Assembly: GCA_965112735.1 (NCBI GenBank)
Contig: OZ218956.1
Span: 992,001 to 1,056,000, forward strand
Source: Phaeosaccion multiseriatum
Lineage: Eukaryota > Protista > Ochrophyta, other classes
DNA: 64,000 nucleotides
Direction of reading: 5' to 3'
The notes under the pieces are model-generated. The model worked only from the letters and a program-made list of their open reading frames with translations. It did not search any database and had not been told where the DNA came from. Shown in pieces: positions 6,001 through 64,000 of this stretch (its first letter is position 1; every line of letters begins with the position of its first letter). The translations under genes and the position numbers were made by a program.

Positions 6001-6967
6001 CAGAGACGAGGCGGAGAAGGAGTGGGAGCGGCTCGTGGCGGACAGCGGGAGCGCCAGAGCGAATGTGTCGAGACTGGAGGAGATGGTGGACGTGTTGAAG
6101 GAGACCGTCGTGGGCCTCAAGGGGGAGCTTGTAGCGCTCGAGGCGGAAGCAGGGGATGATGGACCCGCCTCAGAGAAGATGTCCACTCGGTTACTCGCGG
6201 CAAAGGTAACAGAAGCGCAGCTGCACACAAGATTGAAGGGGGTTCTGAAGCATCAAATGGAGCTGCGGAGAATGATGGAGAAGCGAGATCGTCGCATCGA
6301 GGAGCTGAAGAGAGACCTGAGTGCCCAAAGGCGCCTCTTGAAGGGCAAGCGACGGGGGGCGGGGGAGGGAGAGTCGGGCGGTGGAGAAGAGGGGGGGAAA
6401 TCCCCGGCCCACCACCAGCCGGAGCAGCCGAGGCAGAAAACCTCCCAGCGGAACGGCGGAGGTCCTGCTGCCTCCGACGAGCACGTACAGGACCATGGAG
6501 GCCCTACGCGAGGCAACGCTGCTGACGGAGGTGGTGGGGGTGACCGGCAGGGCGCGGTGGGCGGCAGTGTACAGCTGATGCGGCGCTACGAAGAGCAGAG
6601 AGCTGCTCTGATGAGGGCGGAGCAACAATTGGCGGAACTGGGCACTGCCGGGTCGGAGGGAGATGCGGCGCACAGGGCGGGACTGGAGTGGGCAACGAGC
6701 ATCTCTCGTGCTGAATGCTCGAGGTGTGCGGAATTCAGGCAACAGAGAGACGAGGTGGGTGCAATAGGCTGTATTCCTAAGGCCGCTGAGGGACTGAACG
6801 CGTGCTGCATTGCTCACCATAACTTTTACCTCTCTGTGACTGACTCCCTGTCTCATGGTAAGGCGGAGATTCGCCGTCTTTCGGCCGAGAAGATGGTGGA
6901 GGAGCTTAGGGCCCGCCACATCAGGGGTAGGAATAAGGAGGCGTCATCATCGGAGGGATTAGACAAG

Positions 6968-7004
<37 letters not shown>

Positions 7005-11370: not shown

Positions 11371-12723
11371 TCAAGGCCGGAGTGGCAGCCAGCGAAGGGG
11401 CGCCAGCGGAATAGTGGGCATCCGCACCATCGCCAGTGCCCCCTCGGGGGCGGCCGGCGCTGTGATGGGCCCCAACGGCGCCGCAAGTCCGAAGCTGGGC
11501 ACCTCGGGCATGGTGTGGCAGGGCTTGACTCTCCGTGACGAGGCTGACGCCGAGGCTGTGGCGGGGCACTCCTTGAAGCAGGGGTCCTGCAGCAGCGGGT
11601 CCTGGTCCACAGCAGGAGCGACTTGGCCGAAACGAAACTCGCAGCTGAGGTCGTCGAAATCAGGCACCATCTCAAGGGGCATTCCCAGGACGTTTTGGAA
11701 GAAGGTCTGCGTGGGGACTTTGCAGAGATTCATGCACGCGCCCTTGCACCGTGAGGCCTCGAGATAGCGGCAGCGCTCCACTTTGACAGTGGACCTCCAC
11801 AGCTCAGGCGGCCGATCTGGCTCGTGAGGGAAGGTGATCTCCTTTTGAATGAGCTGGGAAGGTCCCACCAGCCAAGCGAAGAGCGGGGGGCACATAAAGG
11901 CATTGATCTCCGCCGAGAGCTTGGTGGGAGGGAAGAGCACACGGTACAGGGTGGGGAAGAAGGATGGAAAGATGCTCCCCAGCACCGCCATTACCACTTG
12001 TCGCTGCTCCTCCGGGGGACCCTCCTGCAGCTTCCACGCCAGCTTGACGTAGCTCTCGTACGTGATGGGCTCAGGCAAATCTGCTTCAGTCCCGCCCACC
12101 GCTGCGTTGATGCGCTTTGCAAACAGTTGGATCCATAACTTGTCCGTGAAGCTATCGTTATACACATTGTCCTGATCCGGGGAGGCAAAAGGGTAGGTGG
12201 CCAGCGCTACTGCTGGTGGGTCTTCTATCCTCAGCCGTTTCACCCCCTTCTGGAAATCAGGCGTTGCCTCATCGCTCGAAGCACTTTCTTTCTGCCCGCT
12301 CGTCTGCTCATCGCAGGAGGAATAGTACTGCTGCTGCTGCTCTTCGTAGACAGGAAAGTCCAGACCGAAGCTACTGCTGCAGTCGGTTTCCATCGTCATT
12401 GAACATGACCGTTTCCCTTGGACAGAGCAAACTCTCCCGTCTGACACACCCTTTCGAGAAAAGCTCCCGCTGCTGCTACTGCTGCTGCTGCTGCTACTCC
12501 TGCAGCCAACTGCATTCGTTCTACGACTAGTCATATGTCCACTGCCACCGCCCAGCCCTCCTCTTCCGCGCGGTTGCTGCTGGTGCTGCTGCAGATGCCT
12601 TTGGTGCTGCCCCGACCGCGAAAAGCGGGTCGACAAGGCAGGGACAAAGCTCGCCACCCCACGCAGGCCAAGCCCGGCGCAGCACCAAGCGGCCACCACG
12701 CTGTTCACACGCCCGCGCTTCAT
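11371..12723 (-). CDS. D27: Beta-carotene isomerase D27 family protein (DUF4033), plastid-targeted, intronless
   Basis: FAWLVGP ... VKVERCRYLEASRCKGACMNLCKVPTQTFF..LGMPLEMVPDFDDLSCEFRFGQVAP..DP....PC is the D27 Cys-rich signature. N-terminus is a hydrophobic signal followed by VAS-FVP (ASAFAP-like) and a Ser/Arg-rich transit peptide. First ATG at 12723. Confidence 0.9.
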   Translation of the reverse strand: MKRGRVNSVVAAWCCAGLGLRGVASFVPALSTRFSRSGQHQRHLQQHQQQPRGRGGLGGGSGHMTSRRTNAVGCRSSSSSSSSSSGSFSRKGVSDGRVCSVQGKRSCSMTMETDCSSSFGLDFPVYEEQQQQYYSSCDEQTSGQKESASSDEATPDFQKGVKRLRIEDPPAVALATYPFASPDQDNVYNDSFTDKLWIQLFAKRINAAVGGTEADLPEPITYESYVKLAWKLQEGPPEEQRQVVMAVLGSIFPSFFPTLYRVLFPPTKLSAEINAFMCPPLFAWLVGPSQLIQKEITFPHEPDRPPELWRSTVKVERCRYLEASRCKGACMNLCKVPTQTFFQNVLGMPLEMVPDFDDLSCEFRFGQVAPAVDQDPLLQDPCFKECPATASASASSRRVKPCHTMPEVPSFGLAAPLGPITAPAAPEGALAMVRMPTIPLAPLRWLPLRP

Positions 12724-12912
12724 TCCCACACGCGACGCTGTACCCCTGGCCTTATGATGGTGATTGTGACACAGCCCTGGTCAGAGGTTTCACATTTGCC
12801 CGCCAGCTGTGATTCTTGATGACCAACTTCCCCCGGCTCTTTTTTTTTTTGGTGCTTTCTGGCTTTTTGGTCTCAAAGTGAGTGGAGAACCACACCTAAC
12901 CAGCGGGAAAGG
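12724..12912. promoter_or_regulatory. Probable bidirectional promoter between D27 and the proteasome alpha gene
   Basis: 189-bp gap between divergent ATGs, containing a T-rich tract. Inferred from layout only. Confidence 0.45.
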
Positions 12913-47923: not shown

Positions 47924-49897
47924 ATGAGAGGAAATCAGCCCCCAACGGCGTGGCTACTACTTTTGCTGCTGTTCTCTATATCGAGGAGCTGCCTCAGTGA
48001 GAGAGAGTGCAATTTCATTCAATCTAGAATCACCGTCGTTTATGGTAAGTTGGGTGGCTCGGGACGAAGAAAAGGGGGAAAGGCGTCGGGAGGAGGAGGA
48101 GAGGGAAGGACTGGTTGCGCAAAGATGATGGCTTTGTCTTGTTTAGGGACCGTCCTCACGGAAACTGAGGGAGGCGTTGGTGGGGAGAAAAGGGAGGGTG
48201 GGAAGGAGGGAGGCAAAGGGAGAGAGAAGGGATTGAGAGGTGAGTATCCCTCATTTTTCTCCTCGGCTGGGCACACTTGTGGTGCTGACACCCTTCTATA
48301 CGCTATGGCTCTGACCCACTCCTAGGTGCGCTAGTATGGCCGGACCATGACTGGGCTGCATTAATTGCTGGTCAACTGGGAGACCTGAATGCATCTGGTC
48401 TCGTGGGAGACCCGCGGCTATCTTCCCTCAATGTCGTACTCTCCATCCCTGAATCCCACGGGGACATGACGGAGGCCGATCTCGAGGAGCTGCTCGCCAG
48501 CGCCATATCTTTGGTGGAGCGTGAGTTGCCTTCAGCGTCTATCTTCGCGTTCGGGCATAATGCATTCGAGTTCCCGGCTCTACATTTGTTGTGGTCTATA
48601 GCTCACAGTCTGACTGAAGAAGAAGCGCAGCAAAACTCCATGTTGTACTTCCACTCCAAGGGAATGGTTCACCATCGACATGACCAGGCGGCGCGACTGG
48701 ACATTGAGAAGCAGCTGTCCTCCTTGACAATCAACGCATGGCAGCAAGTGGTGAATTTGATGGAAGAACGCCCGGCCTTGACGAGGGTTGGCCTGTACCC
48801 AACTCAACACGGGTCCATGTGGTTTAATTTCTTCTGGGCCAGAGCTTCCTACATTCAACATCTTCAGGAGCCGCTAAAAACCACTTACCGTTACTATTTT
48901 GAGCACTGGCTAGGGCTCACCGTGGAGTTAGACCCCCCCCTCACCCAAACGGATATTTACGGGGGGTCTTGTGATACATGCCTTGGTCTCATCTGCAGCA
49001 AGAACCATTCGGTACTGGGTCAACTGTCATGGAGGTACGTGCGGAGGTTCGATATGGACCATCCTCGAATCATGCACTAGCTCTAACCTTGTACGGCGAT
49101 CAAGACGGAAATGAAGTGCTTTTATCGTAGGAACGATTATCTGTGAACTTAGTGTACAATAGCCGTGGCTTTGTCTGTCATTGATGCCTCTGCTGTAAGA
49201 GACAACGCGGATACAGTAAAACAGCCTGATGAGTTGTGTGTGTGGTGGTGTGCCTTTTATCTGTGTGTAAGACATGTGTCTCACACTAACTTCCCAAATT
49301 GTCTCAAACTAACTTCCAAAGTTATGTCCCCTTTTTTCCAGACCTATGGATATCCCTGAGCCTGCTCTATGGGGGTCTATGATGGCGGCTGACTGCAGCC
49401 CTATTGATGAATTCCCAAAGCTGTACCAAATGGAAACGACTGTCGAGGCACTGCTCGACTTCGGATTAGGTAAGTGGTGGTACAAGAGTTATTTTCCTCC
49501 ATGGGAATGAAGTTGGTCTGGAGACATCACTGGCCTTGTGGTAGTGGTCCTCTGTGTGTGTGTGGGGGGGGGGGGGGTGGTTTGCGTGTATGTTTCTTAT
49601 TTTGCCTCCTTGCCCTTATGAAGCGTCACTCGGAATGGCCTAACTCCCGTCCGTATTGTATCTCCTCGCCTTCTGACTTGCGCCTCTTCAGACGATGACA
49701 ACGTTTGGCGCATCAACGTGAAGCGACAAGAACGTGACGGAGGCATCGCTATATACCGCGAGACTGCCAACAGTATCTATTATCTTTTTCCTGAGCTGGT
49801 GGAGAGGATGTTGGGCAATGCTGAAAACGCACTGGCGGCAGAGGCTTTGATGAGCTTTCTCACAAGCACACCGCCAAGGGATAATAGTAGCAGTTAG
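47924..49897 (+). CDS. Secreted/luminal glycosyltransferase-like protein of the uncharacterised YFHSKG..NFFWAR..RY..E.WLG family
   Basis: Signal peptide MRGNQPPTAWLLLLLLFSISRSCLS. Exons 47924-48044, 48326-49034, 49342-49469 and 49692-49897 splice in frame. Motifs: NAFEFPALHLLW, MLYFHSKG, WFNFFWARASYIQHLQEP, RYYFEHWLG. Confidence 0.7.
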
Positions 49898-50078
49898 CAC
49901 GTTCTTTCCTGTTCTCAATCCTCCTTCCGCCGGCAGGCTGTTCTCCCTCCGCCGCAGTTCCTTGTACCTCTGGTACGGCGAGTTGACTAGGCTGCACCCA
50001 GAACAGCTCCATACGCAGGACATATCGTAGTGTCTTTACATTTTTCATTATTCTTCTTACTACAACTTCGTATAATAT

Positions 50079-50124
50079 GTATAAACAACTCACTGTAGTT
50101 GTATAAACCACTCACTGTAGTTGT
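50079..50124. repeat. 22-bp tandem duplication at the 3' end of the kinase-methyltransferase gene
   Basis: gtataaacaactcactgtagtt / gtataaaccactcactgtagtt. Confidence 0.9.
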
Positions 50125-52134
50125 TCTGGTCGATGGTTTCGGCGCCGTCGTTGAGAAAGTACCGTCCGCCGTGGACGGCGAGCAACACCCGGCGGGTCGG
50201 GGTGACGGCACCCAGGTCGATTACGGAGGGGAAGATGGACTGTAACACCTGCAAGAGGACAGAGTAGTATGATGAGCGGACATTGTTCGAAAGCGATTGT
50301 ACGACCTAACTCGCTTCCCCAGAAATCAACCTCCCTCCCAATAGTATGATTGAGCTGATGCATGGTGACGCACTCACCCGAACGAACTCGGCGTAGGTGT
50401 AAGGGCTGTCGCCGCGCTCCCAACCCTCCGTGTGTGCGAAGGTCTGAATGGCTGAGTCTGTCGGGTCGATCCACTCGATGAAGAGCGCCTTTCGCGCTTT
50501 TGCTGCTAGCTTCCCGATGGCCTGCGCCAGACTGCCCGAGCCCTCGGAGCAGTTAAAGATCCAGTGCACTAAGGCCAGCGCGACAACCACGTCCGCGCCG
50601 TGCTCCAGCTCCTCCAGCTTGCGGTTATCGACGTGCAGCCTGCCTGTCAGGGGCTCGCCCAAGTGGGAAATGGCGGCTTCGACATTCCTGTGGGCGGACA
50701 AACAGGTGGACGAAACAGAGCAACCGTCGCGTGAGCTGATGGACCTGAAGAGGGGGGATCAGCCGTCCGATAAAGCATGACATTTCTCTCATCCAACCAA
50801 GCCCCCTTCGCGGGTCAGTGTACTTCCGCCCCGCCCCGCCCATTTTCTGTTGCTCACGTACGTGGTATAGGTAGGGTCCATGTCCAACAGTGTGGCCTCG
50901 CGGGCGCCATACCGCAGCGCGCTGAAGCAAAAGTAGCCGTGATTGCCCCCGATGTCCAGCAGCGACAAGCCCCGTACGTGCTTCTTGAGAATGGGATCGA
51001 TGAGAGCGCTTTTGGTCTGGATGCCCTCAGACATGGCCTTTAGTCCAAATTCGAACGCATGTCCCTCGGTGACATCTTCCCCTGCTCCTGCACTGCCCGC
51101 AGTCTCCTCGTTTAAAACAAGCCGTCTTTGTGCCACCTGGAAGGCCTGGTAGCCGTGAAACTCGACGAAAGGCAGCCCGTCGGGTGTTTCAAAGCGTTCA
51201 AACTGCGCCCCCGGTGCATACATGTTGGGTTGTCGGCAGAGTGCACTTCTCACCTCGTTCCCCACCCCCCTGCCCGCTATTGCTCCGCCTGCTCCTGCGC
51301 CTGTCGGCGGTTGCAAAGACTCCAACTGCTCAAGGAGAGCGTCAAGCTCGTCAGTAGACCACTGCCTCGGTATCCACCGGTCGTCTTCCTCCACCATTCT
51401 CTCGTCCACCATTGCGGAGACCACGGGCGCCAGCCACCTCGTGTCCAGCCTCGCAAACACCGTCAACATCGTCTGCAGCACCAAACCGGCGCTGTACACA
51501 TCACTGGGGCCGTGAGGGTGGGCATAGCCGCCGTTCAACACTCTCGGTGGGGGGAACATGGGCGCGACTAAGGGAGACATTGCCCACGTGAAATCCACCA
51601 GGATGAGTCTATGATGCCGCTCCTCCACATTCCCCACCGCTGCTTCTCCCAGTTCCGTTGGGGTGGTCACGATAAAGTTGGCTGCACGAACGTCTCTGTG
51701 AATGATGGACGAGCTCCGAAGCGCTCTGAGTATGCCTAGCATGTCCCTGACGATCCGTCGGTACTCCTCTTGCTCGCGAATGGTACTCACATGCACGACC
51801 AAGTCCACCCCTTCCACGTACTCTGTCAGACACACGGACGCCTTGGACAAGGCGTGGGCGGGGAGCAAGTAGTAGGCTCGCGGGAAGAAGGGAGGGATAC
51901 CACTGCTGCTGCTGCTGCTGCTGCTGCTATCGATCGAGGCACTGTCACTTTCCAGCATGAATAAGTGCACACACTCCACAACGGCAGCGTCGTACCCCTT
52001 CTCGGGCCAGTCAATCCTGCTGGTGCGCGCCTGAAAGGGTATAGACAGAGAGGCGGTACTCGCCATATTAGGAAGGAAATTAGGTGGGGGGGGGAAGAGA
52101 GGGAAGGGACCATACCAAGGCCACTGTCGCCCCC

Positions 52135-52178
<44 letters not shown>

Positions 52179-52518
52179 CGGCACCCACCTTGAAAGACTT
52201 GAACTTGTCGGTGCACGGGGCCTCGCTGTCTTGTAGCTCGACCTGGAAGGTCCGCGACGTACCCCCCACCACTTCTGTCCAATCTGTGTCCTCCAGTGCT
52301 ATTCCACAGCTGGCAAGCTCCGTGGTCAAGGGATTGGTCGTTGGGAGGTAGCTGAGCGCCCTGATGCTGGCCATGTGCGCCCAGGGAAGCACAGCAGCTC
52401 CATCCGCGTCCCCATGCTGATCATCTCCATCTGCCGCTACTGCTGCCGCTACTGCGGCCGCTGCCGGCCCCCGAGAGACGACGCCTCCAAGCAGAAGCAG
52501 GAGAGTCAACAAGAACAT
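50090..52518 (-). CDS. Signal peptide + protein-kinase-like domain + class I SAM-dependent methyltransferase fusion
   Basis: Exons 52518-52189, 52030-50862, 50687-50378 and 50248-~50090. Signal MFLLTLLLLLGGVVSRG. Kinase: GGTSRTF, TEYVEG, IIHRDVRAANF, LVDFTWA, SDVYSAG. MTase: LLDIGGNHGYF, LLDMD, ADVVVALALVHWIF, LFIEWIDPTD. The 3' end is uncertain. Confidence 0.85.
52139..52178. repeat. (GA)n microsatellite, intronic
   Basis: gagagaga... run. Confidence 0.9.
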
Positions 52519-52743
52519 GCCCTGCCACTCTGTGGTGAGCGTTATGAAAGAGAATGGAATGAGCCGGTGAGTAGATCTTATTGACTTAATAGGAATCACC
52601 GGTGAGATTGAATACGCACATTGGTGATACAAGTTTACTCACAACTTATTTTATATCATTATTTACCTCACCCCCTCTATCCCCTCGTCCCCTCATAATG
52701 TCCCCCTCTCCGTACCGTCTAATAGTCCTTTAAAAGTGTGCTG
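52519..52743. promoter_or_regulatory. Probable bidirectional promoter shared by the kinase-methyltransferase and GT-B genes
   Basis: 225-bp AT-richer gap between divergent ATGs. Confidence 0.45.
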
Positions 52744-54051
52744 ATGCGTGCGATTAGCCCCGTCGTGATGCTAATCATAACCTTTCCTTTTTCTGAAGTG
52801 GTATCTGCCTTGTCGACGCCTTCGACAACAGAGATGGAGGAGGAGCAGCCGAGTCCTAAGCAGCTTCTCGAAGAGTGGTATGGGGAGGAGGGGGAGAATA
52901 AGGAGCGGCGGGACTTGGAATGCGGGCAGAGTGGGAAAGAGGAGCAGCAGCTGCCGGGAGGCTTGGGCGCGAACCTGCCAGGAGGCTTCGAGAGTGTTTA
53001 CATCCTCTTTAAAGGCAGCCTCTTTGAGGAAACTTCCTACGGGATCCAAGAGCTGCTTGCCACAGAAGGTGTCGTGGCGTACGTTTCCAGCATGACCGAA
53101 GACTACGTATGGGAAGCGGGCATGCTAGACCCGTCCGCACTCTTTATACTCCTGGGTTGGATTCATGACTTTCCAGTAAAGCCGCTACGTTTCAAGTATG
53201 TCCTGATTCAGATGGAGCAAACGCAGAGCAATTGGTTCATTCAAGCGCCCTACCAAAAGGCAATGAGAGACGCGCTTGCCATTTGGGACTACAGCCCCGT
53301 GGCAGTCCAGCTGGAGCGGGAAGCGGGCCTCTATGCGTTCGAGATTGGAATGCCCATAGACTCAGCGTACCTCAGTGTTCCATACGCGTTCACTGATGTG
53401 TCCAAACCAGTGCCTGATGAGCTTCGGGTGATCGATGTGCTGTGGTATGGAGTAAATACCGAGCGACGGGAGGAGTTCTTCCAGCTCATGCAGGCGACTT
53501 GCAAAGAGCACGGGTATGGTACAGTGTATAGGCACGTCAACCTTTATGGCTCAGGGAGGGACGAAGTTGTTACTTTGAGCAAGGTCGTGCTGAACATTCA
53601 CGCTTTCTGTGACTACTTGCAACTCGAGGTCCACCGGCTTCACTACCTCCTCTCGATGGGCAAGGTAGTGGTCAGCGAGAGAGGGGATGACCCCGAGCTA
53701 GAGAAGCTGTACGAGGGAGCCGTCGTCTTTTCTGATCTGGAGGACATGCCCCGAATCGCTGGGGACCTCATTCAAAACTCAACATGGCGATGGGAGATTG
53801 AAGGAAAGGCGAGGGCCTTGGCGGAGAAGCTTCAAGGCGAGGGCAGTACCCTGGTGCAGGCGTGGAGGAGCACGATGGAGCTGGCGGGATACGTAGATGA
53901 GCACGGAGTCTTTCCCAACGGCCGAGCCGCTCAGGGGCAGCAAGAGAGTGAGGAAGATTCAAGAATAGTCGTTCTACCGTCGCTGGAGCTCAAGAGGGAA
54001 GACTTTACGCATCTGTCGCAGCTGAAACAGAGACTGACAAGTGGACACTGA
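52744..54051 (+). CDS. Intronless GT-B (family 1/Glyco_trans_1_2-like) glycosyltransferase with signal peptide
   Basis: YVLIQMEQ, AIWDYSP, IDVLWYGVNTERR, LYGSGRDEVVTLSKVVLNIH, LEVHRLHYLLSMGKVVVSERGDD, YEGAVVF. Hydrophobic N-terminus MRAISPVVMLIITFPFSEVVSA. Confidence 0.8.
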   Translation: MRAISPVVMLIITFPFSEVVSALSTPSTTEMEEEQPSPKQLLEEWYGEEGENKERRDLECGQSGKEEQQLPGGLGANLPGGFESVYILFKGSLFEETSYGIQELLATEGVVAYVSSMTEDYVWEAGMLDPSALFILLGWIHDFPVKPLRFKYVLIQMEQTQSNWFIQAPYQKAMRDALAIWDYSPVAVQLEREAGLYAFEIGMPIDSAYLSVPYAFTDVSKPVPDELRVIDVLWYGVNTERREEFFQLMQATCKEHGYGTVYRHVNLYGSGRDEVVTLSKVVLNIHAFCDYLQLEVHRLHYLLSMGKVVVSERGDDPELEKLYEGAVVFSDLEDMPRIAGDLIQNSTWRWEIEGKARALAEKLQGEGSTLVQAWRSTMELAGYVDEHGVFPNGRAAQGQQESEEDSRIVVLPSLELKREDFTHLSQLKQRLTSGH

Positions 54052-54918
54052 CAAGGCGGCAGGGAGGAAAGCAACACTGACAACGACAGCAGCGCGCGGA
54101 AGAGCCAAGCAGAGAGGGGATGCGGGAGAAGGAGCCTCTCTCTTGGCGAGCTGAATGAGCAAGGTTCCGTGGAAGGCCTTGAAGAGATTGAGACTGTGTC
54201 GAAGGGGAGAAGATGCTGAACCCCAGCGAAACGCTGGAACTTGGAAAGGTCCGGCTGAGGAAGCAGAGTTTCAGCCCGTCACAGGTTTCTGCTCACCACC
54301 ATCTGAAGAGGCATGGGCTACTTGACGCACCGCGGCCGGGGGGCGGGGGGCGGCAAAGGGTGGCTGGTGAGAACAGTAGCGAAGGGCCACAGCCATGCCG
54401 CAGCGTCCACTCAACCTCTGAGCGTGGGTACCTTGGTGCGAGGGTATGAGTGAAAGATGGCAGTGGCGGGATGGCCCCTGCCACTTGCGCAGCAACGCTC
54501 GCACGCGCGGGCATCAACGTGGAGTCAGATAGCTCTGCGCAGCGCAGGTCCTGGGGCCTGGTTCAGGGCTCGACCCAAAGCATCATCAACTGGCAGTCTG
54601 CCCCTGCCCCCTGCCGATCCGCAGGCGGCTATGCCACTACGGCAGCTATAGGGTTGGTGCGTCGTTCAGTGAGCCATAGCACACGCACCCGTCCATCCTC
54701 TTGCCCCCCCCCTCCCTCACTCACTCACTCACTCACTCCACTCTCACTGAACCACTCACTCAATGGCCCGCTCGGTATCTCCTGCCTCCCCCCCCCAGGT
54801 GTTCGCCGGGTACCTCTCCGTGGACAAAGTGAGTAGACTTCACGTCCGGAGAGAGGCCCAGGCAGAGCAAAGGCGCAGGCTTGCTCCTGCTGCTGCAGCG
54901 TCCCTGTCAGGCTCGTAA
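54052..54918 (+). pseudogene. Coding-like but interrupted region downstream of the GT-B stop, ending in a spliced transmembrane-like segment
   Basis: ORFs 54213..54449 and 54450.. share a frame and are split by one TGA. An apparent intron (~54657-54798) joins GGYATTAAIGL to VFAGYLSVDK..* (TAA 54916-54918). Confidence 0.25.
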
Positions 54919-55305
54919 CGGGCGGCCTGCGAGACTCTCGAAAAGCACTGACTGAGTCGGAGGAAGAGAACCTGCTCTCACATCTAGGTGCTGCTGATTG
55001 CGAGGCGTAGTTGCACGATGCTAGCAGCATGGGCTACGCTGGTGGCCCGCTTGAAAAAGGAGCGCGCGCGGTACAGGAGAACTATACGATAGCCGGCCAA
55101 GCATGAGCGAGCTCTCTTTACGGCCGGCAGCAGGGCCTCACGATGCAAGGAACTGGAATTTCTTTCACCGTACTCTGCGCGTTTTAGTAAGCAATCACCC
55201 CTCCCTGAAGGTGAACCATGCCCCTGTGATTAAGTCCAAGACGAGTGTGTGAGTCAGGTGGCGCTTGCGATCTTGTGGGAATTCACCCCTTCTATTTATC
55301 AGAGC

Positions 55306-56945
55306 CTAGGTCTTGGCATCGCTCTTCGCCACGGCGTGGTTTGCCTCGTACTGCTGCTCTGTGCGCATAGCGATACATGAACTTTGTAGGTCCGCGTCCA
55401 CTACTACTGCTGCTGCTGCTGGTGCTGGTGCTGCTGTTGCTGCTGCCTCGTCATCCCGCCGCCGCTGGTCCATCTTCTCTCGTCCACCAGCGCTCTGTTG
55501 CCGTGAACGCTTTCTCTCTTTCCGCAGCTCTCGAACTCTGGTCGCATTCGTCGCCAAGGCCATGAGCAGCAGCAGTAGCAGGCGCGGGGTACAGGAAGGA
55601 TTAGTCTTTGTAGTCTGCTTCGATGTTGTAGCCCTACGACATTGTTCCCTTCCACCTACCTGTCCATGTCTGTGCCGGCCTTGCCCAGCGCATCCCGTCG
55701 CTCCTTCCTCCGCTCAGTGTCAGGCACCATCACCAGCTCCATGTTGTTCTAAAGCAAGAGTGGGGATGCCAACGGAGAGGTGGAGAGGGGAAAGCAACGC
55801 AGAGGAAGCAGCAAAGCAAGGGTAAGCACAAGCGCAGAGACGTTGAGTGGCGAACTCGACGGGAACTGGCCGCTGGCGCCGGCATTGGAACACCGCAGTG
55901 CTTACCCTCTTCGCGTTCAGCAGGATGCGCTGTGCCGTTGTCTGCTCAACCCCCGCGGGGAGGGGATAGGACATGACAGAGCAGTAGGATGAGCTTACGT
56001 CAGAAGTGGGGAAGGACCAGTCTTGATGAGTAAAAAGGAGGGATATTGGGAATACTCTGAGAGCATATAAAAGAAAAATTGACGCAAGCCTCCATCCAAA
56101 AGCCCCATGAGCGTGTGCGCACCGCATGGTATGATACGCAGCGCCGAACCCCCGCACACACGAGCAGCTTGTAGCAGGTCAAGCACGGAGGCCGCGTGAT
56201 GTAAAAAGTCGAGCCTTCGAGTTTGATCCCTGTGTATTCGATAAACGGCCGCAGAGCGTGGAAAGAATGAGACCACGACCTCTCACCCTCAACACAACGG
56301 GGAGCTGGGACAAGGCCTACGTATCGATTCATCGAGCTGGGGTGATTGCTCTCATCCACTAACCGTGTCGAGCGCAGTAGCTGACGGCATTGGCCTCGGC
56401 GTGGCAATCCGAGGTGCGGCCGCCGAAGATGGGCGAGTTGATGGCGTTGAGTATGATGCGCGCACCTGAGCCTGCTTCGTCCTGGGGCACGGCGCTTCCT
56501 CCCCCTATATCTGTACCCTGAGTCACGACACAGCCCATGCTTCCCTCCTTGCTGCGGCGTGCACCAAGCAAAGTAGAAAGCAGAGCACATCGCGACATAT
56601 AGAGGGGATAGAGAGGACTTCATCAGGCAAAGGGACAAAGAGGGGGGAGGAGGGCGCCACGCAAGCCTTACCACACGCTGTTCCGAGCCATAAGATAGGC
56701 GAGGTCTAGGTAGTTCTCGTCCACACTGTTGCGAGAAGGCACAAGATGCAAGGCAAAGAAAGGAGGAATGTGAGGACAAAGGGAGGGAGGGCAGGACGAC
56801 CCCCCCCTTTTCTTTTTTTTTACCTTTCGCCTGGTGTCCACTTCCAGTCGAACGTGGAGAGGGACCGTACATCCAGAGGTTTGAAAGACCCCGCAAAGGG
56901 GCCATTGTTCTTGTGCTCTTCTCGCGGTGACTCCGAGTCCTCCAT
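55306..56945 (-). CDS. Cytidine/deoxycytidylate deaminase family protein (dCMP deaminase-like)
   Basis: Spliced: DENYLDLAYLMARNSVCKEGSMGCVV, DCHAEANAVSYCARHGIKLEGSTFYITRPPCLTCYKLLVCAGVRRCV (HAE + PCxxC zinc motif), then NNMELVMVPDTERR..RVRELRKERK. The middle exons are uncertain. Confidence 0.85.
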
Positions 56946-57095
56946 CCTGTTAGATGATTGAAGTAATTAAGCCATTTGTGAATGCCTGCAGGATGTTGAA
57001 CTGGCCAACCAATCAACTGCCACCTTCACACTAAGTCAATAAAGTCCTTCACACTATCAGCCTCCGGTGCTCCGGGATCGGGATAGACTCCGGGA

Positions 57096-57313
57096 ATGGA
57101 TGGGCGGAGGACGACGACGACGAGGAGGAGGAGAAGGGCACCATCAGTCGTTCCGTTTTTGCCTGCCTCTTGCCTGTTGTGGCTCCTCGGCGGAGGGGGG
57201 AAGCTGTTGCCAGCTCGAGATCACAACCCAGAAGGACCGATACTATGGGGGGGGGGCTCGTTGCGTGTGGCCGAAGGCGCCCAGATAGGAGGAGATCAAT
57301 TCCAGACCTACTC

Positions 57314-57356
<43 letters not shown>

Positions 57357-60300
57357 CAGGACCAGCAGCGGGAGAAATTTGAGAGAGTCTTCATTCTGTA
57401 CAAGGAGGTGTCACCGTTTGCCAATAATATCCGTGACACTGCTAACGGGTTGGGAGAGGGACTAAAGAGGATCATATCCCAGCAGAAAGAAGAACAGCAG
57501 CAGGGAGGGCCCGCCTTAACAGTGCTAGTTTCTGAAGTTTCAGAGGGGGAAGCTTTCCTCTGGGAGGGATGCATGAGGGACCCAAAGGTGAGCAACCTTG
57601 TGTGAGCGCGGGTTGGAAAGAAAGGGGCCGTCCCATCCTTGGAGCCTTTGATATCATATCTCCCTCCCTGTCCCAGCAGATCTTGTTCATTGTTTTGGGA
57701 GCGGCTGGTGAGTGGTTAGCCTTTCCCCAGGCCCGTCGCTACATACTTGTCCAAACCGAGCCTTTGGATGGGTTTGGACTCCTTCTTGATGCGTACCAAC
57801 AGAAGCTTCGAAATGCTTTGGCTATTTGGGACTTCGGACCCGACTCTGCTCAGGTATCAGTTGCCTTGATCTCTAAAAACGCAGAGCAGGTTTGCACGGT
57901 CGAGCCTGAGTGTCTGATTGAGTGTGGTGCGTTTGTCAACGTGTTGTGGTTGTATGCTTACAACACAAGAACCAATTCTTCCACCAAACCTGCTCCCTTG
58001 GGTCTCAGGTTTTGCGGGCCGCAGGATTGCATGTCTGGCATGTCGATCCCCCTGTCTCCGGCCACGCGGTGCGCAACTCACAAATCTTTGGCTTTGTGGA
58101 CGAGGAGCCAATTGGGCCTGAGCGGCGGCCCATAGGTAGGGATTAAGGGAAGGGCTTGGTGTGTCTCTTGTGCGTCTATCTATATGACTCTCCCTCTTTC
58201 TCTCTCCATTCGCCATGTGAAAGATGTGGTAGTCGATGGGTGGACGGGAACGAGCCGCGAGCACGCTTTTCTGCGCGCTGGCTTGGTGCCCCGGGCAGAG
58301 GCGTATGACCTAGAGCTGGACCGCATTTACATCAATTCTTTCATGCGAGGAGCACGCCGAGATGAGGCCCTTTTCTTGGCAAAGGTGGGTAGGTAGATGC
58401 AAAAAGGCGGAGGTCTGCAATTGACCTGGGGGCGAGTCAGGCAGCCTGGCCTTCTCCCACGTACCCCCGCCCCTACCCCCCCCTTCTCTTTGCAGGTGGT
58501 TGTGTGTTTACATGCGCACGGTCCCGCCAAGCACTTGCACAAGCAGCGCTTGTTCCACCTCCTGGCTATGGGTAAGTCAGCGTTCTTCCAGCGTTTGGTT
58601 GTTTTTAACTGAGAGGTGGACCCTCCCGAAAAGTCGGGGTTTCCTCTGCGTTTGGGGCGTATCTTTATGCGCCTCCTTCCCTCGGCGTTTGGACCTTGCT
58701 ACAGGCAAGGCTGTGGTGTGCGAACAGGGAGATGGGACCGAGCTCAGCGCTTGGTATGCCGACGCGGTTGTGTTTGTGCAGTCCCCAACTGAAGTCCTTC
58801 CTGCAGTGGCCACTTTGCTGAAGCACCCGGCTAAGCTCCGGCAGCTGGAACGGAGAGCATTGGCTCTTTGGCAGACTCACACGGCAAATACCTGGAACCA
58901 GACAGGGGGGGGGGGAGAAGGCATGGGAGGCGTGGGAGGTGCCGATTATCCCTCGCCATCGCCGCTGGAGGTGGCCTGGCGGGAGAGCCTGGCCCTAACT
59001 GCTCATCTGGAGAGGCAACCTGCCCTCCCCGACAGTGGAGAAAGGAGAGGTTCGCGAAGGGTTGACGAAGGGGGGATGGAAGAGCTATTATACTGCTCTG
59101 GTCAGGGCCCTGACGACAAGATGTTGGGGCCGAACAATAGCTCAGATGAGCTGTGGGCCGCTCGTGGAGCCCAACTCTCCAGTGCGTGGCAGGTGAGCCC
59201 AAATGACAAACTCCACACAGAGAGGGCACGGAGAAGCGGACTGCCCGTAATCAGTTTATGACAAGCCCACACGCGCGATTGGTCATGTACCCCTCCCTTC
59301 TTCAGGATCGTCTGTTGACCCCAACCCTCTTCAGCTGCTTCTCGATGGAACGCTCTGCTTCAAGCTATCAGTGCTTTGTCGTGGACTGCTGGCACCACCG
59401 TGTCCTCCTCGTCAACCCACCAGACCCGAGCAACCAGTCTTCGAAGCTAGAGAACGGCACTGGTGAGAACCAAATCGCTCTCCTTCCACCTTCTGCAAGA
59501 GGGCCGAAGCCAGGAAGGCCCGTCAGGTGAATCCATTAGCAAATTGTCTGCATTTGTTAGTGCATGCGTGCAAGCGCTGGCAGACTTTGGTGAGCACACG
59601 ACTGTCTCTGAAGTTATGACCCGCACCTTCTAACGACTGCAGGGAATGGGCGACAACTCTGGATCAAGACCCCATTGCTGCACCACATAGCCTCGCTCCG
59701 GATGAAGCTGGTACTCGCGTGCTTGTGGACTGTTCGGAGGAGAGGAGTGTCCGCGTATACGCCAAGACACATGCCGACTTGGGAGAGGAGGAAAGGGCGG
59801 GCAGAGGAGGTGCTCAGCAGGCTTATATCTTGGCTCAGATAATAGTATCACCCCGAGGGGGGGCACCTCACCGCATACGGTTCTCCAGGTGGGTTGGGAT
59901 AGTAGCGTAATGACTTTTCTGGAGCGATGGCTGTTCTCACGTGCGTAGCCCCCTCCCCCCTCCTTGCCTGTGCCGTCTCTTAGGGGGGCTTGGTATGTGC
60001 TCTTCAACTTACCGCTACACGTTGTGCGGCTGGTGGAAGACGACGCCAGAGGATGGCCATATGTCAAAGTGGATGCAAGCCCTCTCCTCCCGGAGCAGTT
60101 CCAGTGCTACTCTCGGTCCTTCTTCCTTGATTGGGATGACGGCGGTGACGAGAAGGAAGGTCCTGTGCCTCCGTGGAAAGGTCCTGTTCTCTACGTGATA
60201 TCCACGTGTGAGGCGGTCGCTCACGTTCAATGGTGGGGCCGGGGTGAGGAGACAGAGCTGGAGCTCGTTGCTGATTACAAGGTGCCTGAACATTGGAAAG

Positions 60301-60926
60301 AAGTGAATGACATACATCTGCTGGCAAAGTCGGGAGTAAGCGAGGCTGAAAGTCTTCCATGCCGAGGAGGAACAGCACCAGGAGCGTGTTCCAGAGATGA
60401 AAAGGCACCCGGCGGCATCCAAGATTCAGCTGCTGGCGAGTACCCGAGGTCGTCGGCTCCTCCTGCTCACCCTCCGTCGAGCTCGTCGTGGTGGCTTCTG
60501 ACGTCGTTTGCGCCCCTTCCCAGTCTGCAGTTGTGTAGCAACATTGCCTCTCTGTCCACCTCCTGCGTCGATATTCAGGAGCGCTGCGGACTTGGCCCTG
60601 ATGCTCTCCCGTATTTCTTCGGGAAAGCGCCTCCTCCTCCCTACGCTCGAGCCCTGTTTCACCGCAACGAAAGTCATGATGTGGTGTACCTCACTCTGAC
60701 CACTGTTGACTTCGAGCAGTCTGCGGATGACCCTGGCTCCGGCTCGGGACTGTATTACCTTCGCCTCACGAGACAGGAAGCAGAAGGAGATGAGGAGGAT
60801 CGGTCGGGAGTGTGGCAATGTGAGTCCGCGCTGGCGGCTCGCTTCGGATTCGGCTCTCGAGAGAGTTACGCACGCTTTCTTTCCGTGGTTGACTACAAAG
60901 GGTGGTCGATAAATCGCCCGGCGTAA
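57096..60926 (+). CDS. Second GT-B glycosyltransferase paralog (about 8 introns) fused to a C-terminal NHL-like beta-propeller
   Basis: RYILVQTEP, LRNALAIWDFGP, RPIDVVVDG, GARRDEALFLAKVVVCLHAH, RLFHLLAMGKAVVCEQGD, YADAVVF are collinear with gene 52744. Then FVVDCWHHRVLL, APHSLAPDEAGTRVLVD, GAPHRIRF, EVNDIHL. N-terminal basic + hydrophobic anchor and poly-Q. Confidence 0.7.
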
Positions 60927-60939
60927 TGAAGAGAGGACT

Positions 60940-61145
60940 CGTTTTCAACCCCTGATACACTATCGCCCAAGCGCTATCGGCCGCCGGCCAAATGATCGGC
61001 CCCATGCACGCCTAGCGGTTTTGCTCTAGGCCGCTAGGCCGCTCGGCCTTCAGCCGATCTAGGCCTAGGCCGGCGGCCTCCGCCCGCTCTAGCCCGCTCA
61101 CTTTTCAGTCCTAGGCGGCCTACATAGCCCGCCTCTAGGCAGCCT
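60940..61145. repeat. Intergenic patch dense in CTAGG/GGCC palindromic motifs; possible DNA-transposon subterminal remnant
   Basis: Repeated ctaggccg, cctaggc, ctagcccgc and atcggcc in both orientations. No TIR pair or TSD identified. Confidence 0.4.
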
Positions 61146-61575
61146 CCCAGTGACCGTGGGCGCGTGCGTGGTGCCGCCCAGCCAGTGGGTAGCAGCAACA
61201 CCTGTAGGTCTGCACTCCTCGTAGGGCCAGCGAGGCGGAAGAGACAACACGAACGAAGTCTACTCCTCACCTCCAATCCCATGCAATGAAACTGACTACT
61301 CTTTGCACTCTGGGCACTCCCACCGTCCGCCTAGTTGGCTGGCGTCTGCCCGCCGCCTATAGCAGCATTGTTGAAAATGATCACTTTCAGTTTGTTTGAA
61401 AGCTTGAACTGAAACTGGATCTTTGGGCAATGACTCCCAGGCGATGATTTTTCCATCCCTGTAGGTAGGGCATGCCCTTTTCTCCATTAGCGGGATGGAC
61501 CCGATCGAGTCCACTGCACTTGAAGTGGTTCCATAGAGAACCTTAGGGAACAGGAAGGAAGGAGTTTGCTTTGGA

Positions 61576-64000
61576 ATGAATTTATCTTACCGTCTTTGGT
61601 ACCTCGGCTTGTGTTGGGCCACCTGCTGTCTGCGCTTCGCCGCCCCAATACCGCTCTGTGAGGAGGTGTCCTCCAAGGCTGGTGCGCTGCTGCATTCCTT
61701 GGAGGAGGATATCTCAACGAAGGAGGCTTGGGCATATGACGGCAGCATTCTCGACCACGCAGCGGGAGAGGCATGTTTGCAGGCCTTCCAGTGGGATTGC
61801 GCGCTCGTGGTTTTCGGCATGGAGCTCGAAAAATTGCTTGGCGAGTATGGGCTTTACCCTCCTGTCAACGGGGTGGGCGGGCAGAGAAAGACGCAAAAGG
61901 AGATCCTGGCATATTTTGCGGTACCAGCAGGAGGAGGGGGAGACGGGGACGGAAACTCCTCCTCCTCCTCAAATCTTTTCATAGAGGCTGCTGAACGCTT
62001 CTATAACTACGGCTTAGTTAGTCATCACGCGTTCGCAGGAATCGTGACGCTCGACCGTAGGCGGCTGCTCGAGCTATCTCGGAGATCCCTCAGCGTATGT
62101 CTGGATATCTTGGACCACATCGTGCTCGCCCCTGCTGGCGTAGCAGCAGTAGGAGGAGGCAAGGGTCCTGACCGGCCCTTCAGGTCCTCTGCGCCGGAGT
62201 CTGCAGTCACTCTTTATGAGGATTGCCGGAGCACTTTGGCGGATACTTACCTCCTCCTACGGGGCATGCCGTACACACTCCTCGCCAAGGAAGACGAAGT
62301 ACTCGAGGAGTATTACTACCAGCAAGCTCCGATTCCATACGGAGATGAGGGTTCATTAGCCACAGAAAGCGAGAATGCCTGCTTGCTGGAACGGGCCCTC
62401 CTTCACGCTCGCTTTCGGCGGCACGACGTTGCCATCCAGATGCTACTCCCCCACTGCGACGCCAATCCAGGTGGCTATGCCCCCCGGGAGTGTAGAGGTA
62501 CGCATGTACGCAGCAAAGAGGGAGAGGAGGCTAATGTGGGTGGGGGATGCTGTGAGGAAGATCGGAGTAGCAGGGAAGGGGGGCTCGAGCACGATGGGGA
62601 CATTGATGTTCGTCACCAGCTCGACCCCTACTTCGCCACGCCGAGCAAGAGGCAGCCAAAGCGGCAAGAGACGAAAGGTAGCGTCGGAGAGTGCTTCTGC
62701 AGGGCTATCGAGGTCATCCAGAAGCATGCTTCAGTAAGTGTGAGCCTTTCACATGTACACCGGCTCTTGGATGCGGTCATGCCCCTAGGCCAGGCGGGCT
62801 ACCACTTTTCTCCCACCCCTGTCGCTGCTGTCCATGGCGAATCTCTTGCTCACCAAGAGGGTTCGGGGCCAACAGCGAGGCGGGAGGCCTTGAGGGAAGC
62901 AGCGGAGCAAGGCGATGATTCCGTGCCAGCAACGGTGGGGATCTTCCTCCTGCTGGGCCAGGAGAGGATGGAGCTGGCCGCCGCTCACCCGCTGCTTTGC
63001 CGTTCGCTGCTTCATCTCTGGCGCTCACCTGAGCATCGAGCTACTGTGGCGAGGTGCCGCCTGCACGTAATTGGCTCGATCAGGTCAGTGATGTCAATGG
63101 GAGACAAGGACAGGTAGACGCTTTCGTGACTTTCCTCTCACCATCTTTCTCTATGGTTCCCTCGGGCCTGGCCTCAGCCCCGCTTACCCGCAGCAGGAGG
63201 AGAGCTTCCGCCGGGCACTGGGGGAGGCCGCCGACCACCTGTGGGGCGGTTACCACCTCGTAAGAGGGGCGGACTTGCCCCAATACGCTTGGGACGGAAA
63301 CTATCTGCGGTACGTGCGTGTGTTGGTTGGTCGTATCGTGCTTGCGGTGCCTGCAAAGTAAAGTGCTTGTGTCTCTTCCCATTCAGTGCGAGTCTGAGGT
63401 CCGCCCTTTCCCGTCAACTGAAGCCCTCTGATGTAGAATCATACGCTTTTTACTGACCACGTCGTCTTACCCGCTACACCTTCTCTTGTTCTCCTCACTC
63501 GTGCGCTGCAAGCCCTTCTTACCTCCCTCGTCCCTTCTCTCCTGGAACATCGTAGGAAAGTTTACTCCTTCTATTGGCTAAGCGCTTCTCTGGGGTACAC
63601 TCATGTCATGAGTGTCGACGACGACATAATCATCTCGCCGTACGCGCTCGCTTCCCTCGTGAGCAATGCGGACAAGCTAACTTACACCCCTCATCCCCCG
63701 GGCGGAGAGGAGTCGAAAGACAGGGCCCGCGAGGAGGAAGGACAGGCAGAGGCAGGAGAGATGATGGCGACGGCGGAAGCATCCAACTACCGCCACCGCT
63801 CGGCCAAGGGCACAGAAGGAGCAGAAGCGCGAGCATGTAGTATCCTCTCTCCCGCACTCTCTACGGGCATACCCTCCACGGAGATGTGGATCGACGCGCA
63901 CCTGCTGTCGGACAGTAGCGGGAGAGAGGATGCTGTCGATGCAGAGGCCATTCTGAAGTGTTTCGCGCAGTCGACGGTTCCCGAAGGAGACTTGCAGACA
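61576..64000 (+). CDS. Secreted/luminal protein with TPR-like helical N-terminus and a GT-A (DxD) glycosyltransferase-like domain; 3' end outside the window
   Basis: Signal MNLSYRLWYLGLCWATCCLRFAA. Exons 61576-63083 (or -63113), 63178-63309 and 63556->64000 splice to GNYLRKVYSFYW..GYTHVMSVDDDIIISPYALASLVSNADKL...CSILSPALSTGIPSTEMWID. The last exon is absent from the ORF track. Confidence 0.7.

What the first reader, a model, noticed from the sequence alone, without database searches (positions are those of the whole stretch)
47924..64000. Candidate secretory-pathway glycan synthesis and capping gene cluster built from prokaryote/virus-like enzyme families
Seen: five of six consecutive genes encode a signal peptide or anchor plus a carbohydrate-enzyme-like domain (YFHSKG-family protein, kinase-methyltransferase, two GT-B paralogs, DxD GT-A), and the cluster runs off the window. 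The left 48 kb has no such genes. Known: bacterial O-antigen loci co-encode GTs with a kinase/methyltransferase terminator, and giant viruses carry their own glycosylation islands. Inference: from motif recollection, these three GT-like families are typical of giant viruses, large phages and bacteria. This may therefore be a horizontally acquired glycosylation island, domesticated by adding signal peptides and introns, that makes a methyl/phospho-decorated wall, scale or mucilage glycan. Operon-like glycan clusters are rarely described in ochrophytes.
Basis: partly seen in the sequence, partly recalled or inferred. Interest (0 to 1): 0.85.

Follow-up and report, generated by a model that had tools for sequence, protein, structure and literature searches.

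The report
Algal secretory glycan-enzyme gene cluster
A 16-kb stretch of an alga-like nuclear genome holds neighbouring, intron-bearing genes for secreted sugar-adding and sugar-decorating enzymes; giant viruses carry the same domain set fused into single proteins, so the neighbourhood is probably functional, but it is not a fresh viral or bacterial insertion.

Summary
Partly confirmed.
- g1 (47924-49080, +) has a signal peptide and the YFHSKG domain, which is Pfam DUF8361.
- g2 (50090-52518, -) has a signal peptide, a protein-kinase-like domain and a class-I SAM methyltransferase motif.
- g3 (52744-54051, +) has a signal peptide and a compact GT-B glycosyltransferase fold.
- g4 (57096-59261, +) is a five-exon, divergent paralogue of g3.

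The "DxD GT-A" (g6, runs off the window) got no support from any library. The interval holds at least seven candidate genes, not six.

The neighbourhood looks non-random. In viral and metagenome contigs, DUF8361 is fused or adjacent to the same rare GT-B family at four loci. One 735-aa viral protein is methyltransferase + DUF8361 + that GT-B.

Recent horizontal transfer is not supported:
- GT-AG introns are present and GC3 is host-like.
- Identity to any relative is at most 37%.
- Named g3 relatives are ochrophyte proteins that sit dispersed in their genomes.
- A eukaryote-like contig carries a signal-peptide DUF8361 gene.

WbdD-like capping remains an analogy; no sequence link to WbdD was found.

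Best reading: a small cluster of ER/Golgi glycan-building and methylating enzymes, with possible phosphorylation, of old and unresolved (bacterial or viral) ancestry.

The parts
47924..49080 (+). g1: secreted DUF8361 (YFHSKG) protein, about 291 aa. Exon 1 47924-48044, intron 48045-48325, exon 2 48326-49080.
   Evidence: GT-AG intron read. The junction restores the first strand that homologues share. Family HMM E=5.6e-63. Relatives carry precomputed PF27674 DUF8361.
47924..48044 (+). g1 exon 1: signal peptide plus the start of the first beta strand.
   Evidence: Hydrophobic maximum 2.46. The same layout is seen in the eukaryote-like homologue L057.
50090..52518 (-). g2: signal peptide + protein-kinase-like domain + class-I SAM methyltransferase, about 655 aa. 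Exons 52518-52189, 52030-50862, 50687-50378, 50248-50090.
   Evidence: Frames and GT-AG borders read. The total coding length is a multiple of three.
51443..51835 (-). g2 kinase catalytic core (HRD loop, DF(T), subdomain IX).
   Evidence: Pfam Pkinase E=2.6e-8, 34 bits against a cut-off of 31.7. Best PDB sequence matches are ULK1, STK11 and GCN2.
50093..51004 (-). g2 methyltransferase region, split over exons 2-4.
   Evidence: The glycine-rich SAM motif matches TIGR04290 (E=2.5e-4) and CmoB models weakly. No Pfam or PDB hit exon by exon. The assignment is therefore tentative.
52744..54051 (+). g3: single-exon signal peptide + compact GT-B glycosyltransferase (core 52996-53868), 435 aa.
   Evidence: 1,627 relatives. 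33 of 61 family members hit PF13524. AF2 pLDDT 75. Fold matches are GT4-type GT-B enzymes.
57096..59261 (+). g4: divergent paralogue of g3 with an Arg-rich N-terminus and a moderately hydrophobic anchor-like stretch. Exons 57096-57587, 57680-57853 (or to 57889), 58148-58384, 58496-58571, 58705-59261.
   Evidence: HMM and tblastn hits. Last exon hits PF13524 at E=0.0011. Splice sites read. About six of the fifteen (near-)invariant family positions differ.
59964..60926 (+). g5: unassigned 320-codon ORF. Membership in the cluster is unknown.
   Evidence: No hit in Pfam, NCBIfam or PHROGs, or to any fetched locus. No hydrophobic N-terminus.
61576..64000 (+). g6: large gene that runs off the window. 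It has a 513-codon first ORF and then a frame with a DDD motif. The GT-A call is unverified.
   Evidence: no family or structure match.

Best explanation
g1, g2 and g3, probably with g4, form a small physical cluster of nuclear, intron-bearing genes. Their products enter the ER/Golgi and together build and decorate the outer part of a secreted or wall glycan.

- g3 is a compact GT-B sugar transferase.
- g1 (DUF8361) is most likely a second, metal-independent transferase.
- The methyltransferase half of g2 O-methylates the product.
- The kinase half of g2 may phosphorylate the glycan or its carrier protein.
- g4 is a diverged copy of g3 with altered or lost activity.

Shown: the domains, the GT-B fold, the introns, the hydrophobic N-termini, and the recurrent fusion or adjacency of the same families elsewhere.

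Inferred: the compartment, the substrates, the order of steps, and the transferase activity of DUF8361.

The families are old shared property of bacteria, giant viruses and algae. The cluster is not a recent insertion.
For: - Domains and fold.
- Signal-peptide-like N-termini on g1, g2 and g3.
- Rosetta-stone linkage: a 735-aa protein on an IMG/VR contig is Methyltransf_23 + DUF8361 + the g3 GT-B family (HMM 5e-63).
- DUF8361 and the g3 family are also fused or adjacent in L030, L062 and L082.
- About half of the 19 DUF8361 proteins returned carry methyltransferase, GT2 or GT17 domains.
- Viral DUF8361 genes lie among GT2, GT17, GT1, WbsX, pyruvyl-transferase and NTP-transferase genes.
- DUF8361 has no DxD among its invariant residues. 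Its weak PDB fold matches are GT-A and sugar-nucleotidyl-transferase folds.
- Precedent: PBCV-1 A064R joins two sugar transferases and a methyltransferase to finish and methylate a glycan (PMC9614988).
Against: - No expression data.
- DUF8361 has no characterised member that I could link by a tool. Its PDB fold matches are not significant (best E=0.05).
- The g2 kinase looks most like ordinary protein kinases. Its methyltransferase part is weakly supported.
- No relative of g2 was found near any DUF8361 or GT-B locus.
- No synteny in Chrysoparadoxa or Chrysophaeum.
- A deaminase-like gene and an unassigned ORF interrupt the set.
- g6 is unassigned.
Confidence: 0.55

Rival explanations
1. The neighbours are functionally unrelated. 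g2 would be a lumenal protein kinase / protein methyltransferase acting on secreted proteins (as lumenal kinases of diatoms and animals do). The transferase genes would merely lie nearby.
For: The best sequence matches of the kinase are protein kinases, with an HRD..N loop of the tyrosine-kinase-like type. No g2 relative is linked to glycan genes in any fetched locus. The genes lie on both strands and are interrupted by a deaminase-like gene.
Against: A methyltransferase, DUF8361 and the same rare GT-B family recur as one polypeptide or as neighbours in unrelated genomes. The window places all three within 6 kb.
Confidence: 0.22
2. The region is a recently inserted fragment of a giant virus (an endogenous viral element) or of bacterial DNA.
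For: GC is somewhat lower in 48-64 kb than on the left (0.52-0.59 against about 0.60). DUF8361 and the g3 family occur in bona fide giant-virus contigs.
Against: There are spliceosomal GT-AG introns in g1, g2 and g4. GC3 is like that of the neighbouring genes, while the viral relatives are mostly AT-rich (GC 0.17-0.37, a few near 0.50). Identity is at most 37%. No viral hallmark was seen among the ORFs scanned. Ochrophyte homologues of g3 exist. A eukaryote-like contig carries a signal-peptide DUF8361 gene.
Confidence: 0.06
3. It is a WbdD-type chain terminator system: g2 adds a methyl-phosphate cap that fixes the length of a polymer made by g3 and g4.
For: Kinase and methyltransferase lie in one protein next to GT-B transferases. 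WbdD of E. coli O9a has that domain content (own knowledge).
Against: The domain order is reversed. No WbdD chain appeared among the PDB sequence matches shown for any g2 exon. No coiled-coil ruler was seen. There is no ABC-transporter partner in the window.
Confidence: 0.12

Closest known systems
Chlorovirus PBCV-1 A064R (GT-A rhamnosyltransferase + domain 2 rhamnosyltransferase of no known family + methyltransferase), per PMC9614988
   Same: It combines two sugar transferases with a SAM methyltransferase that finishes and methylates a glycan terminus. One transferase is metal-independent and escaped all family searches, as DUF8361 does. Viral DUF8361+methyltransferase proteins of 435-445 aa, and an unnamed 638-aa BFVD match, have fitting sizes.
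   Different: A064R is a cytoplasmic viral protein without a signal peptide; here there are separate, secreted, intron-bearing genes. I could not fetch A064R, so homology of DUF8361 with its domain 2 is untested. The protein I had in mind is named here, with no letters written.
Giant-virus glycosylation gene clusters (Megavirinae, chloroviruses; PMC10117803, PMC9614988)
   Same: The same families (DUF8361, the g3-type GT-B, methyltransferases) are clustered with other glycan genes.
   Different: The window genes have introns, signal peptides and host-like composition. No nucleotide-sugar synthesis genes were seen.
GT4-type GT-B glycosyltransferases (MshA, BshA, PimA, GlgM, TarM)
   Same: Two Rossmann-like halves. 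These are the top fold matches, at probability 1.00.
   Different: The core is only about 290 residues, TM-scores are 0.3-0.57, and identity is 9-14%. g3 itself does not reach any Pfam GT model. No profile match to PDB sequences.
E. coli O9a WbdD kinase-methyltransferase chain terminator (own knowledge)
   Same: A kinase-like and a SAM methyltransferase domain in one protein beside glycosyltransferases.
   Different: The domain order is opposite, no sequence match was found, and the setting is the eukaryotic secretory pathway.
Lumenal secretory-pathway kinases (diatom tpSTK1, FAM20C, POMK; own knowledge)
   Same: A signal peptide followed by a kinase domain with no internal membrane span.
   Different: None is fused to a methyltransferase. 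None appeared among the 60 PDB sequence matches shown.

Membership tests
Pfam PF27674 DUF8361 (g1) | Significant match to the family model | tested here: inconclusive
   The local Pfam copy lacks PF27674. Indirect support: g1 matches a profile of proteins that carry precomputed PF27674 at E=5.6e-63.
Pfam PF27674 DUF8361 (g1) | Family-invariant residues (E of the FEYP motif, Y-x-H-x-K-G, N-F, W) | tested here: met
   All are present in g1 exon 2.
GT-B glycosyltransferase, Glyco_trans_1_2-like (g3) | Two-Rossmann GT-B fold | tested here: met
   AF2 model pLDDT 75. All top PDB matches are GT-B enzymes.
GT-B glycosyltransferase, Glyco_trans_1_2-like (g3) | Match to PF13524 above the cut-off | tested here: not met
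   g3 itself has no Pfam hit at E<=0.1. 33 of 61 relatives hit PF13524, best E=6e-10.
g3 family (g4 as paralogue) | Family HMM match, and retention of near-invariant residues | tested here: inconclusive
   HMM hits on two exons. About six of fifteen conserved positions are changed.
WbdD-type kinase-methyltransferase terminator (g2) | Kinase and SAM methyltransferase in one polypeptide | tested here: met
   Pkinase at 2.6e-8. The SAM motif is supported only weakly.
WbdD-type kinase-methyltransferase terminator (g2) | Sequence relationship to solved WbdD structures, and N-terminal methyltransferase before the kinase | tested here: not met
   No WbdD chain in the PDB matches shown. The order here is kinase, then methyltransferase.
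WbdD-type kinase-methyltransferase terminator (g2) | Methyl-phosphate capping of a glycan terminus | not testable with these tools
   Needs glycan chemistry.
GT-A DxD glycosyltransferase (g6) | Match to any GT-A family model or structure | tested here: not met
   No hit in Pfam, NCBIfam, PHROGs or PDB. The domain is cut by the window end.
GT-A DxD glycosyltransferase (g6) | Acidic DxD after a hydrophobic strand | tested here: inconclusive
   A DDD is present, but the motif is not specific.
Endogenous giant-virus element / recent HGT island | Foreign composition, viral hallmark genes, no introns | tested here: not met
   GC3 is host-like. Introns are present. No hallmark among the scanned ORFs. 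Not every ORF was scanned.
Bacterial-type glycan operon | Co-directional, tightly packed genes | tested here: not met
   Strands alternate (+, -, +, -, +) with gaps of 0.2-1 kb or more.
PBCV-1 A064R domain 2 family | Sequence or fold homology with A064R residues 213-438 | not testable with these tools
The only lead is an unnamed 638-aa BFVD match, together with PMC9614988.

The most novel reading that the evidence does not exclude
Methyltransferase + DUF8361 + compact GT-B would be an ancient, portable 'terminal sugar and O-methyl cap' cassette shared by bacteria, giant viruses and algae. DUF8361 would be the same new transferase family as PBCV-1 A064R domain 2. This alga would have moved the cassette into the secretory pathway and joined the methyltransferase to a lumenal kinase. 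That would give a eukaryotic counterpart of methyl-phosphate glycan capping.
Probability: 0.15. Interest if true: 0.8.

Novelty: new variant of a known kind. Interest (0 to 1): 0.5.

Why it matters
Physical clusters of glycan genes are unusual in algae, and the enzymes that make methylated wall, scale or mucilage sugars in ochrophytes are largely unknown. This locus offers three things:
- It gives a concrete candidate set.
- It ties an uncharacterised domain (DUF8361) to glycan work through recurrent fusions.
- It shows that gene families prominent in giant-virus glycosylation islands also exist as ordinary, intron-bearing secretory genes in algae. That bears on who gave what to whom between viruses and their hosts.

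Tried and rejected
**Searches that led nowhere**
- Pfam, NCBIfam and PHROGs on every exon or ORF of g1 and g3-g6 gave nothing useful, except Pkinase for g2 and weak PF13524 for the last exon of g4.
- PDB sequence searches with profiles of both families found nothing.
- Searches for relatives of g2 in viral and metagenome contigs found nothing. The same was true for g6 in viral contigs.
- The exact-product look-up of g3 found no record. The source genome seems absent from the protein collections, since the best relative is 37% identical.
- phmmer and blastp of g2, g5 and g6 against all fetched loci and proteins found nothing.
- hhalign of the two families against each other showed them unrelated, as expected.
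A 10-sequence alignment found one giant-virus MAG.

**Ideas that did not hold or could not be tested**
- Bacterial contexts of DUF8361 are not polysaccharide loci, so they say nothing about function.
- Neighbour-joining trees were too weak to assign a donor. g3 joins Chrysoparadoxa in 34% of resamplings. The sister of g1 is bacterial-only in 38%, mixed in 54% and viral-only in 9%.
- I tried to reach PBCV-1 A064R for a direct comparison. The primary paper is not held, no genome accession was shown, and cluster names gave no taxon.

The g1 model lacks exon 1, and the g2 methyltransferase was searched in pieces, which may explain its weak matches.
- Some early queries were raw ORFs that read a few codons into introns. 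This is harmless but imprecise.


Full report
**Setting.** The window is GC-rich (about 0.60) with a modest dip to 0.52-0.59 from 48 kb onward. It behaves like eukaryotic nuclear DNA: reading frames are broken by GT-AG introns and there are (CT)n tracts. A D27-like beta-carotene isomerase on the left points to a plastid-bearing host. The source genome does not seem to be in the protein collections. An exhaustive search with g3 found nothing above 37% identity, and the exact look-up failed.

**Gene models.** I searched every model exon by exon, by reference.

- **g1.** It runs from an ATG at 47924 to a GTAAGT donor after 48044, resumes after an AG at 48326, and ends at 49080. The junction places the hydrophobic signal sequence directly before a short strand that bacterial, viral and eukaryote-like homologues all have just before the conserved Trp.
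- **g2 (minus strand).** It has four exons: 52518-52189, 52030-50862, 50687-50378 and 50248-50090. All have GT-AG borders, and the total is a multiple of three.
- **g3.** A single exon, 52744-54051.
- **g4.** Five exons between 57096 and 59261. The frames connect only through GT-AG sites, and the product follows g3 along its whole length.
- **Other genes in the interval.** Between g3 and g4, on the minus strand, lies a cytidine/dCMP-deaminase-like exon. Downstream come an unassigned ORF (g5) and a large gene (g6) that leaves the window. The interval therefore holds at least seven candidate genes, not six.

**What the proteins are: g1.**
- The YFHSKG domain had no match in the local Pfam, NCBIfam, PHROGs or PDB sequence libraries.
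- Its relatives carry the precomputed family PF27674, named DUF8361.
- I found the domain in 21 IMG/VR loci, including named giant-virus MAGs. One contig carries an NCLDV capsid and Rpb1.
- It also occurs in 21 bacterial genomes, among them Mucilaginibacter, Pedobacter, Acinetobacter, Azorhizobium and Xanthobacter, weakly in a 735-kb phage, and in 26 metagenome loci.
- An AF2 model of exon 2 (pLDDT 73) matches predicted structures from Klosneuvirus, Harvfovirus, cedratvirus and several phages (E down to 1e-10).
- It matches nothing in the PDB significantly. The weak leaders there are GT-A and sugar-nucleotidyl-transferase folds (best E=0.05).
- The invariant residues include no DxD.

**What the proteins are: g3 and g4.**
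- g3 belongs to a family of about 285-residue proteins (1,627 hits at E<=0.001).
- g3 itself misses every Pfam model, but 33 of 61 relatives hit PF13524 Glyco_trans_1_2.
- Its AF2 model (pLDDT 75) matches only GT-B glycosyltransferases such as GlgM, MshA, BshA and PimA.
- g4 is a clear paralogue, but it has lost about six of the fifteen near-invariant positions. It may have a changed specificity or none.

**What the proteins are: g2 and g6.**
- g2 carries a protein-kinase domain (Pfam 2.6e-8) with intact HRD and DF(T) loops. Its best PDB relatives are ordinary protein kinases.
- After a linker comes a glycine-rich SAM-binding motif with weak matches to TIGR04290 and CmoB. The rest of that domain is split over three exons and matched nothing when searched piecewise.
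- The 'GT-A' of g6 rests only on a DDD after a hydrophobic stretch. No library supports it.

**Signal peptides.** g1, g2 and g3 have N-terminal hydrophobic maxima of 2.4-2.8. Only 6% of the window's ATG ORFs reach that value. g4 has an Arg-rich N-terminus followed by a moderately hydrophobic stretch, which is anchor-like. g6 is weaker, and g5 has none.

**Is the neighbourhood more than chance?** I could not census the genome, but independent genomes give a Rosetta-stone answer.
- On an IMG/VR contig, a 735-aa protein is Methyltransf_23 + DUF8361 + the g3 family (family HMM 5e-63). It is flanked by two more DUF8361 genes, a GT2, a GT17/methyltransferase/GT1 giant protein and an NTP-transferase.
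- DUF8361 and the g3 family are also fused or adjacent in L030, L062 and L082. That is 4 of 72 (partly redundant) DUF8361 loci, for a family that makes up about one in a million proteins.
- About half of the 19 DUF8361 proteins returned by the profile search carry methyltransferase, GT2 or GT17 domains.
- In the window, g1, g2 (which carries the methyltransferase) and g3 lie within 6 kb. I therefore take the g1-g2-g3 core as a real functional neighbourhood.
- The bacterial contexts of DUF8361 are uninformative.

**How it most likely works.** The products enter the ER through their N-terminal signals (inferred). g3 transfers a sugar from a nucleotide donor (fold-based inference). g1 adds a further residue without a metal (inferred from the fusions and the missing DxD). 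The methyltransferase of g2 methylates the product (inferred from the recurrent methyltransferase partnership). The kinase of g2 phosphorylates either the glycan or its carrier protein (open).

The closest worked example is chlorovirus PBCV-1 A064R. There two transferase domains and a methyltransferase build and methylate the end of the capsid glycan, and the middle domain is a metal-independent transferase that escaped all family searches (PMC9614988). Viral DUF8361+methyltransferase proteins of 435-445 aa, and an unnamed 638-aa BFVD match (638 aa is the length of A064R), make me suspect that DUF8361 is that domain's family. I could not obtain the comparator, so this stays a lead.

**Origin.**
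- GC3 of the cluster genes (0.58-0.76) overlaps that of the left-hand genes (0.60-0.73). Introns are present, and most viral relatives are AT-rich.
- Named relatives of g3 are ochrophytes: Phaeothamnion, Chrysophaeum, Aureoumbra, Chrysoparadoxa (with introns) and Heterococcus (fused to a GT10 domain).
- In Chrysoparadoxa and Chrysophaeum the homologue sits among ordinary genes. Other relatives lie on picoeukaryote-like and giant-virus-like contigs.
- The closest relative of g1 in the metagenome scan lies on a eukaryote-like contig and has the same signal-peptide-then-domain layout.
- Distance trees do not resolve a donor.

**Comparison with WbdD.** Only the domain content is shared. The order is reversed, and no WbdD chain came back among the PDB sequence matches shown for any g2 exon.

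**Verdict.** The cluster is probably functional. The 'horizontally acquired island' and 'capping' readings are not established. It is a new variant of a known kind, of moderate interest.

Noticed in passing
window about 56126-56257, minus strand: A cytidine/dCMP-deaminase-like exon with a PCxxC zinc motif lies between g3 and g4 (Pfam E=1.5e-4, below the cut-off). A dCMP deaminase gene also lies 6 kb from a g3 homologue on picoeukaryote-like contig L053. This is probably coincidence.
   Followed up: partly
window 11374-12729, minus strand: A D27-like beta-carotene isomerase domain (E=3.9e-31) indicates a plastid-bearing host.
   Followed up: no
window 3923-7846, plus strand: A 1307-codon Ala/Gly/Glu/Arg-rich ORF lies on a strongly purine-skewed stretch (GC skew up to 0.28). 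It has no family match.
   Followed up: no
L057 (JAABUP010000583.1), match 5001-5768: A eukaryote-like contig (GC 0.48, few long ORFs) carries the closest DUF8361 relative of g1. That gene also starts with a signal peptide and is interrupted by an insertion that looks like an intron.
   Followed up: partly
L029/L054 10001-12208; L082 6274-8025: Single polypeptides combine a methyltransferase, DUF8361 and the g3-type GT-B. They are preceded by tandem DUF8361 paralogues.
   Followed up: yes
L054 21463-22208: A RuBisCO large-subunit-like gene and a 4380-aa protein lie on the same IMG/VR contig as the fusion protein. The nature of that contig (huge phage, giant virus or cell) is unclear.
   Followed up: no
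window 52135-52178 (g2 intron 1): A long (CT)n tract inside the intron gives spurious Ser-Leu repeats in raw ORF translations.
   Followed up: yes
P0028 (Heterococcus) and P0021: The g3-type domain is fused to a GT10 fucosyltransferase domain in a xanthophyte protein. In a 1706-aa metagenome protein it is fused to GlcNAc-transferase, GT2 and peroxiredoxin domains.
   Followed up: partly
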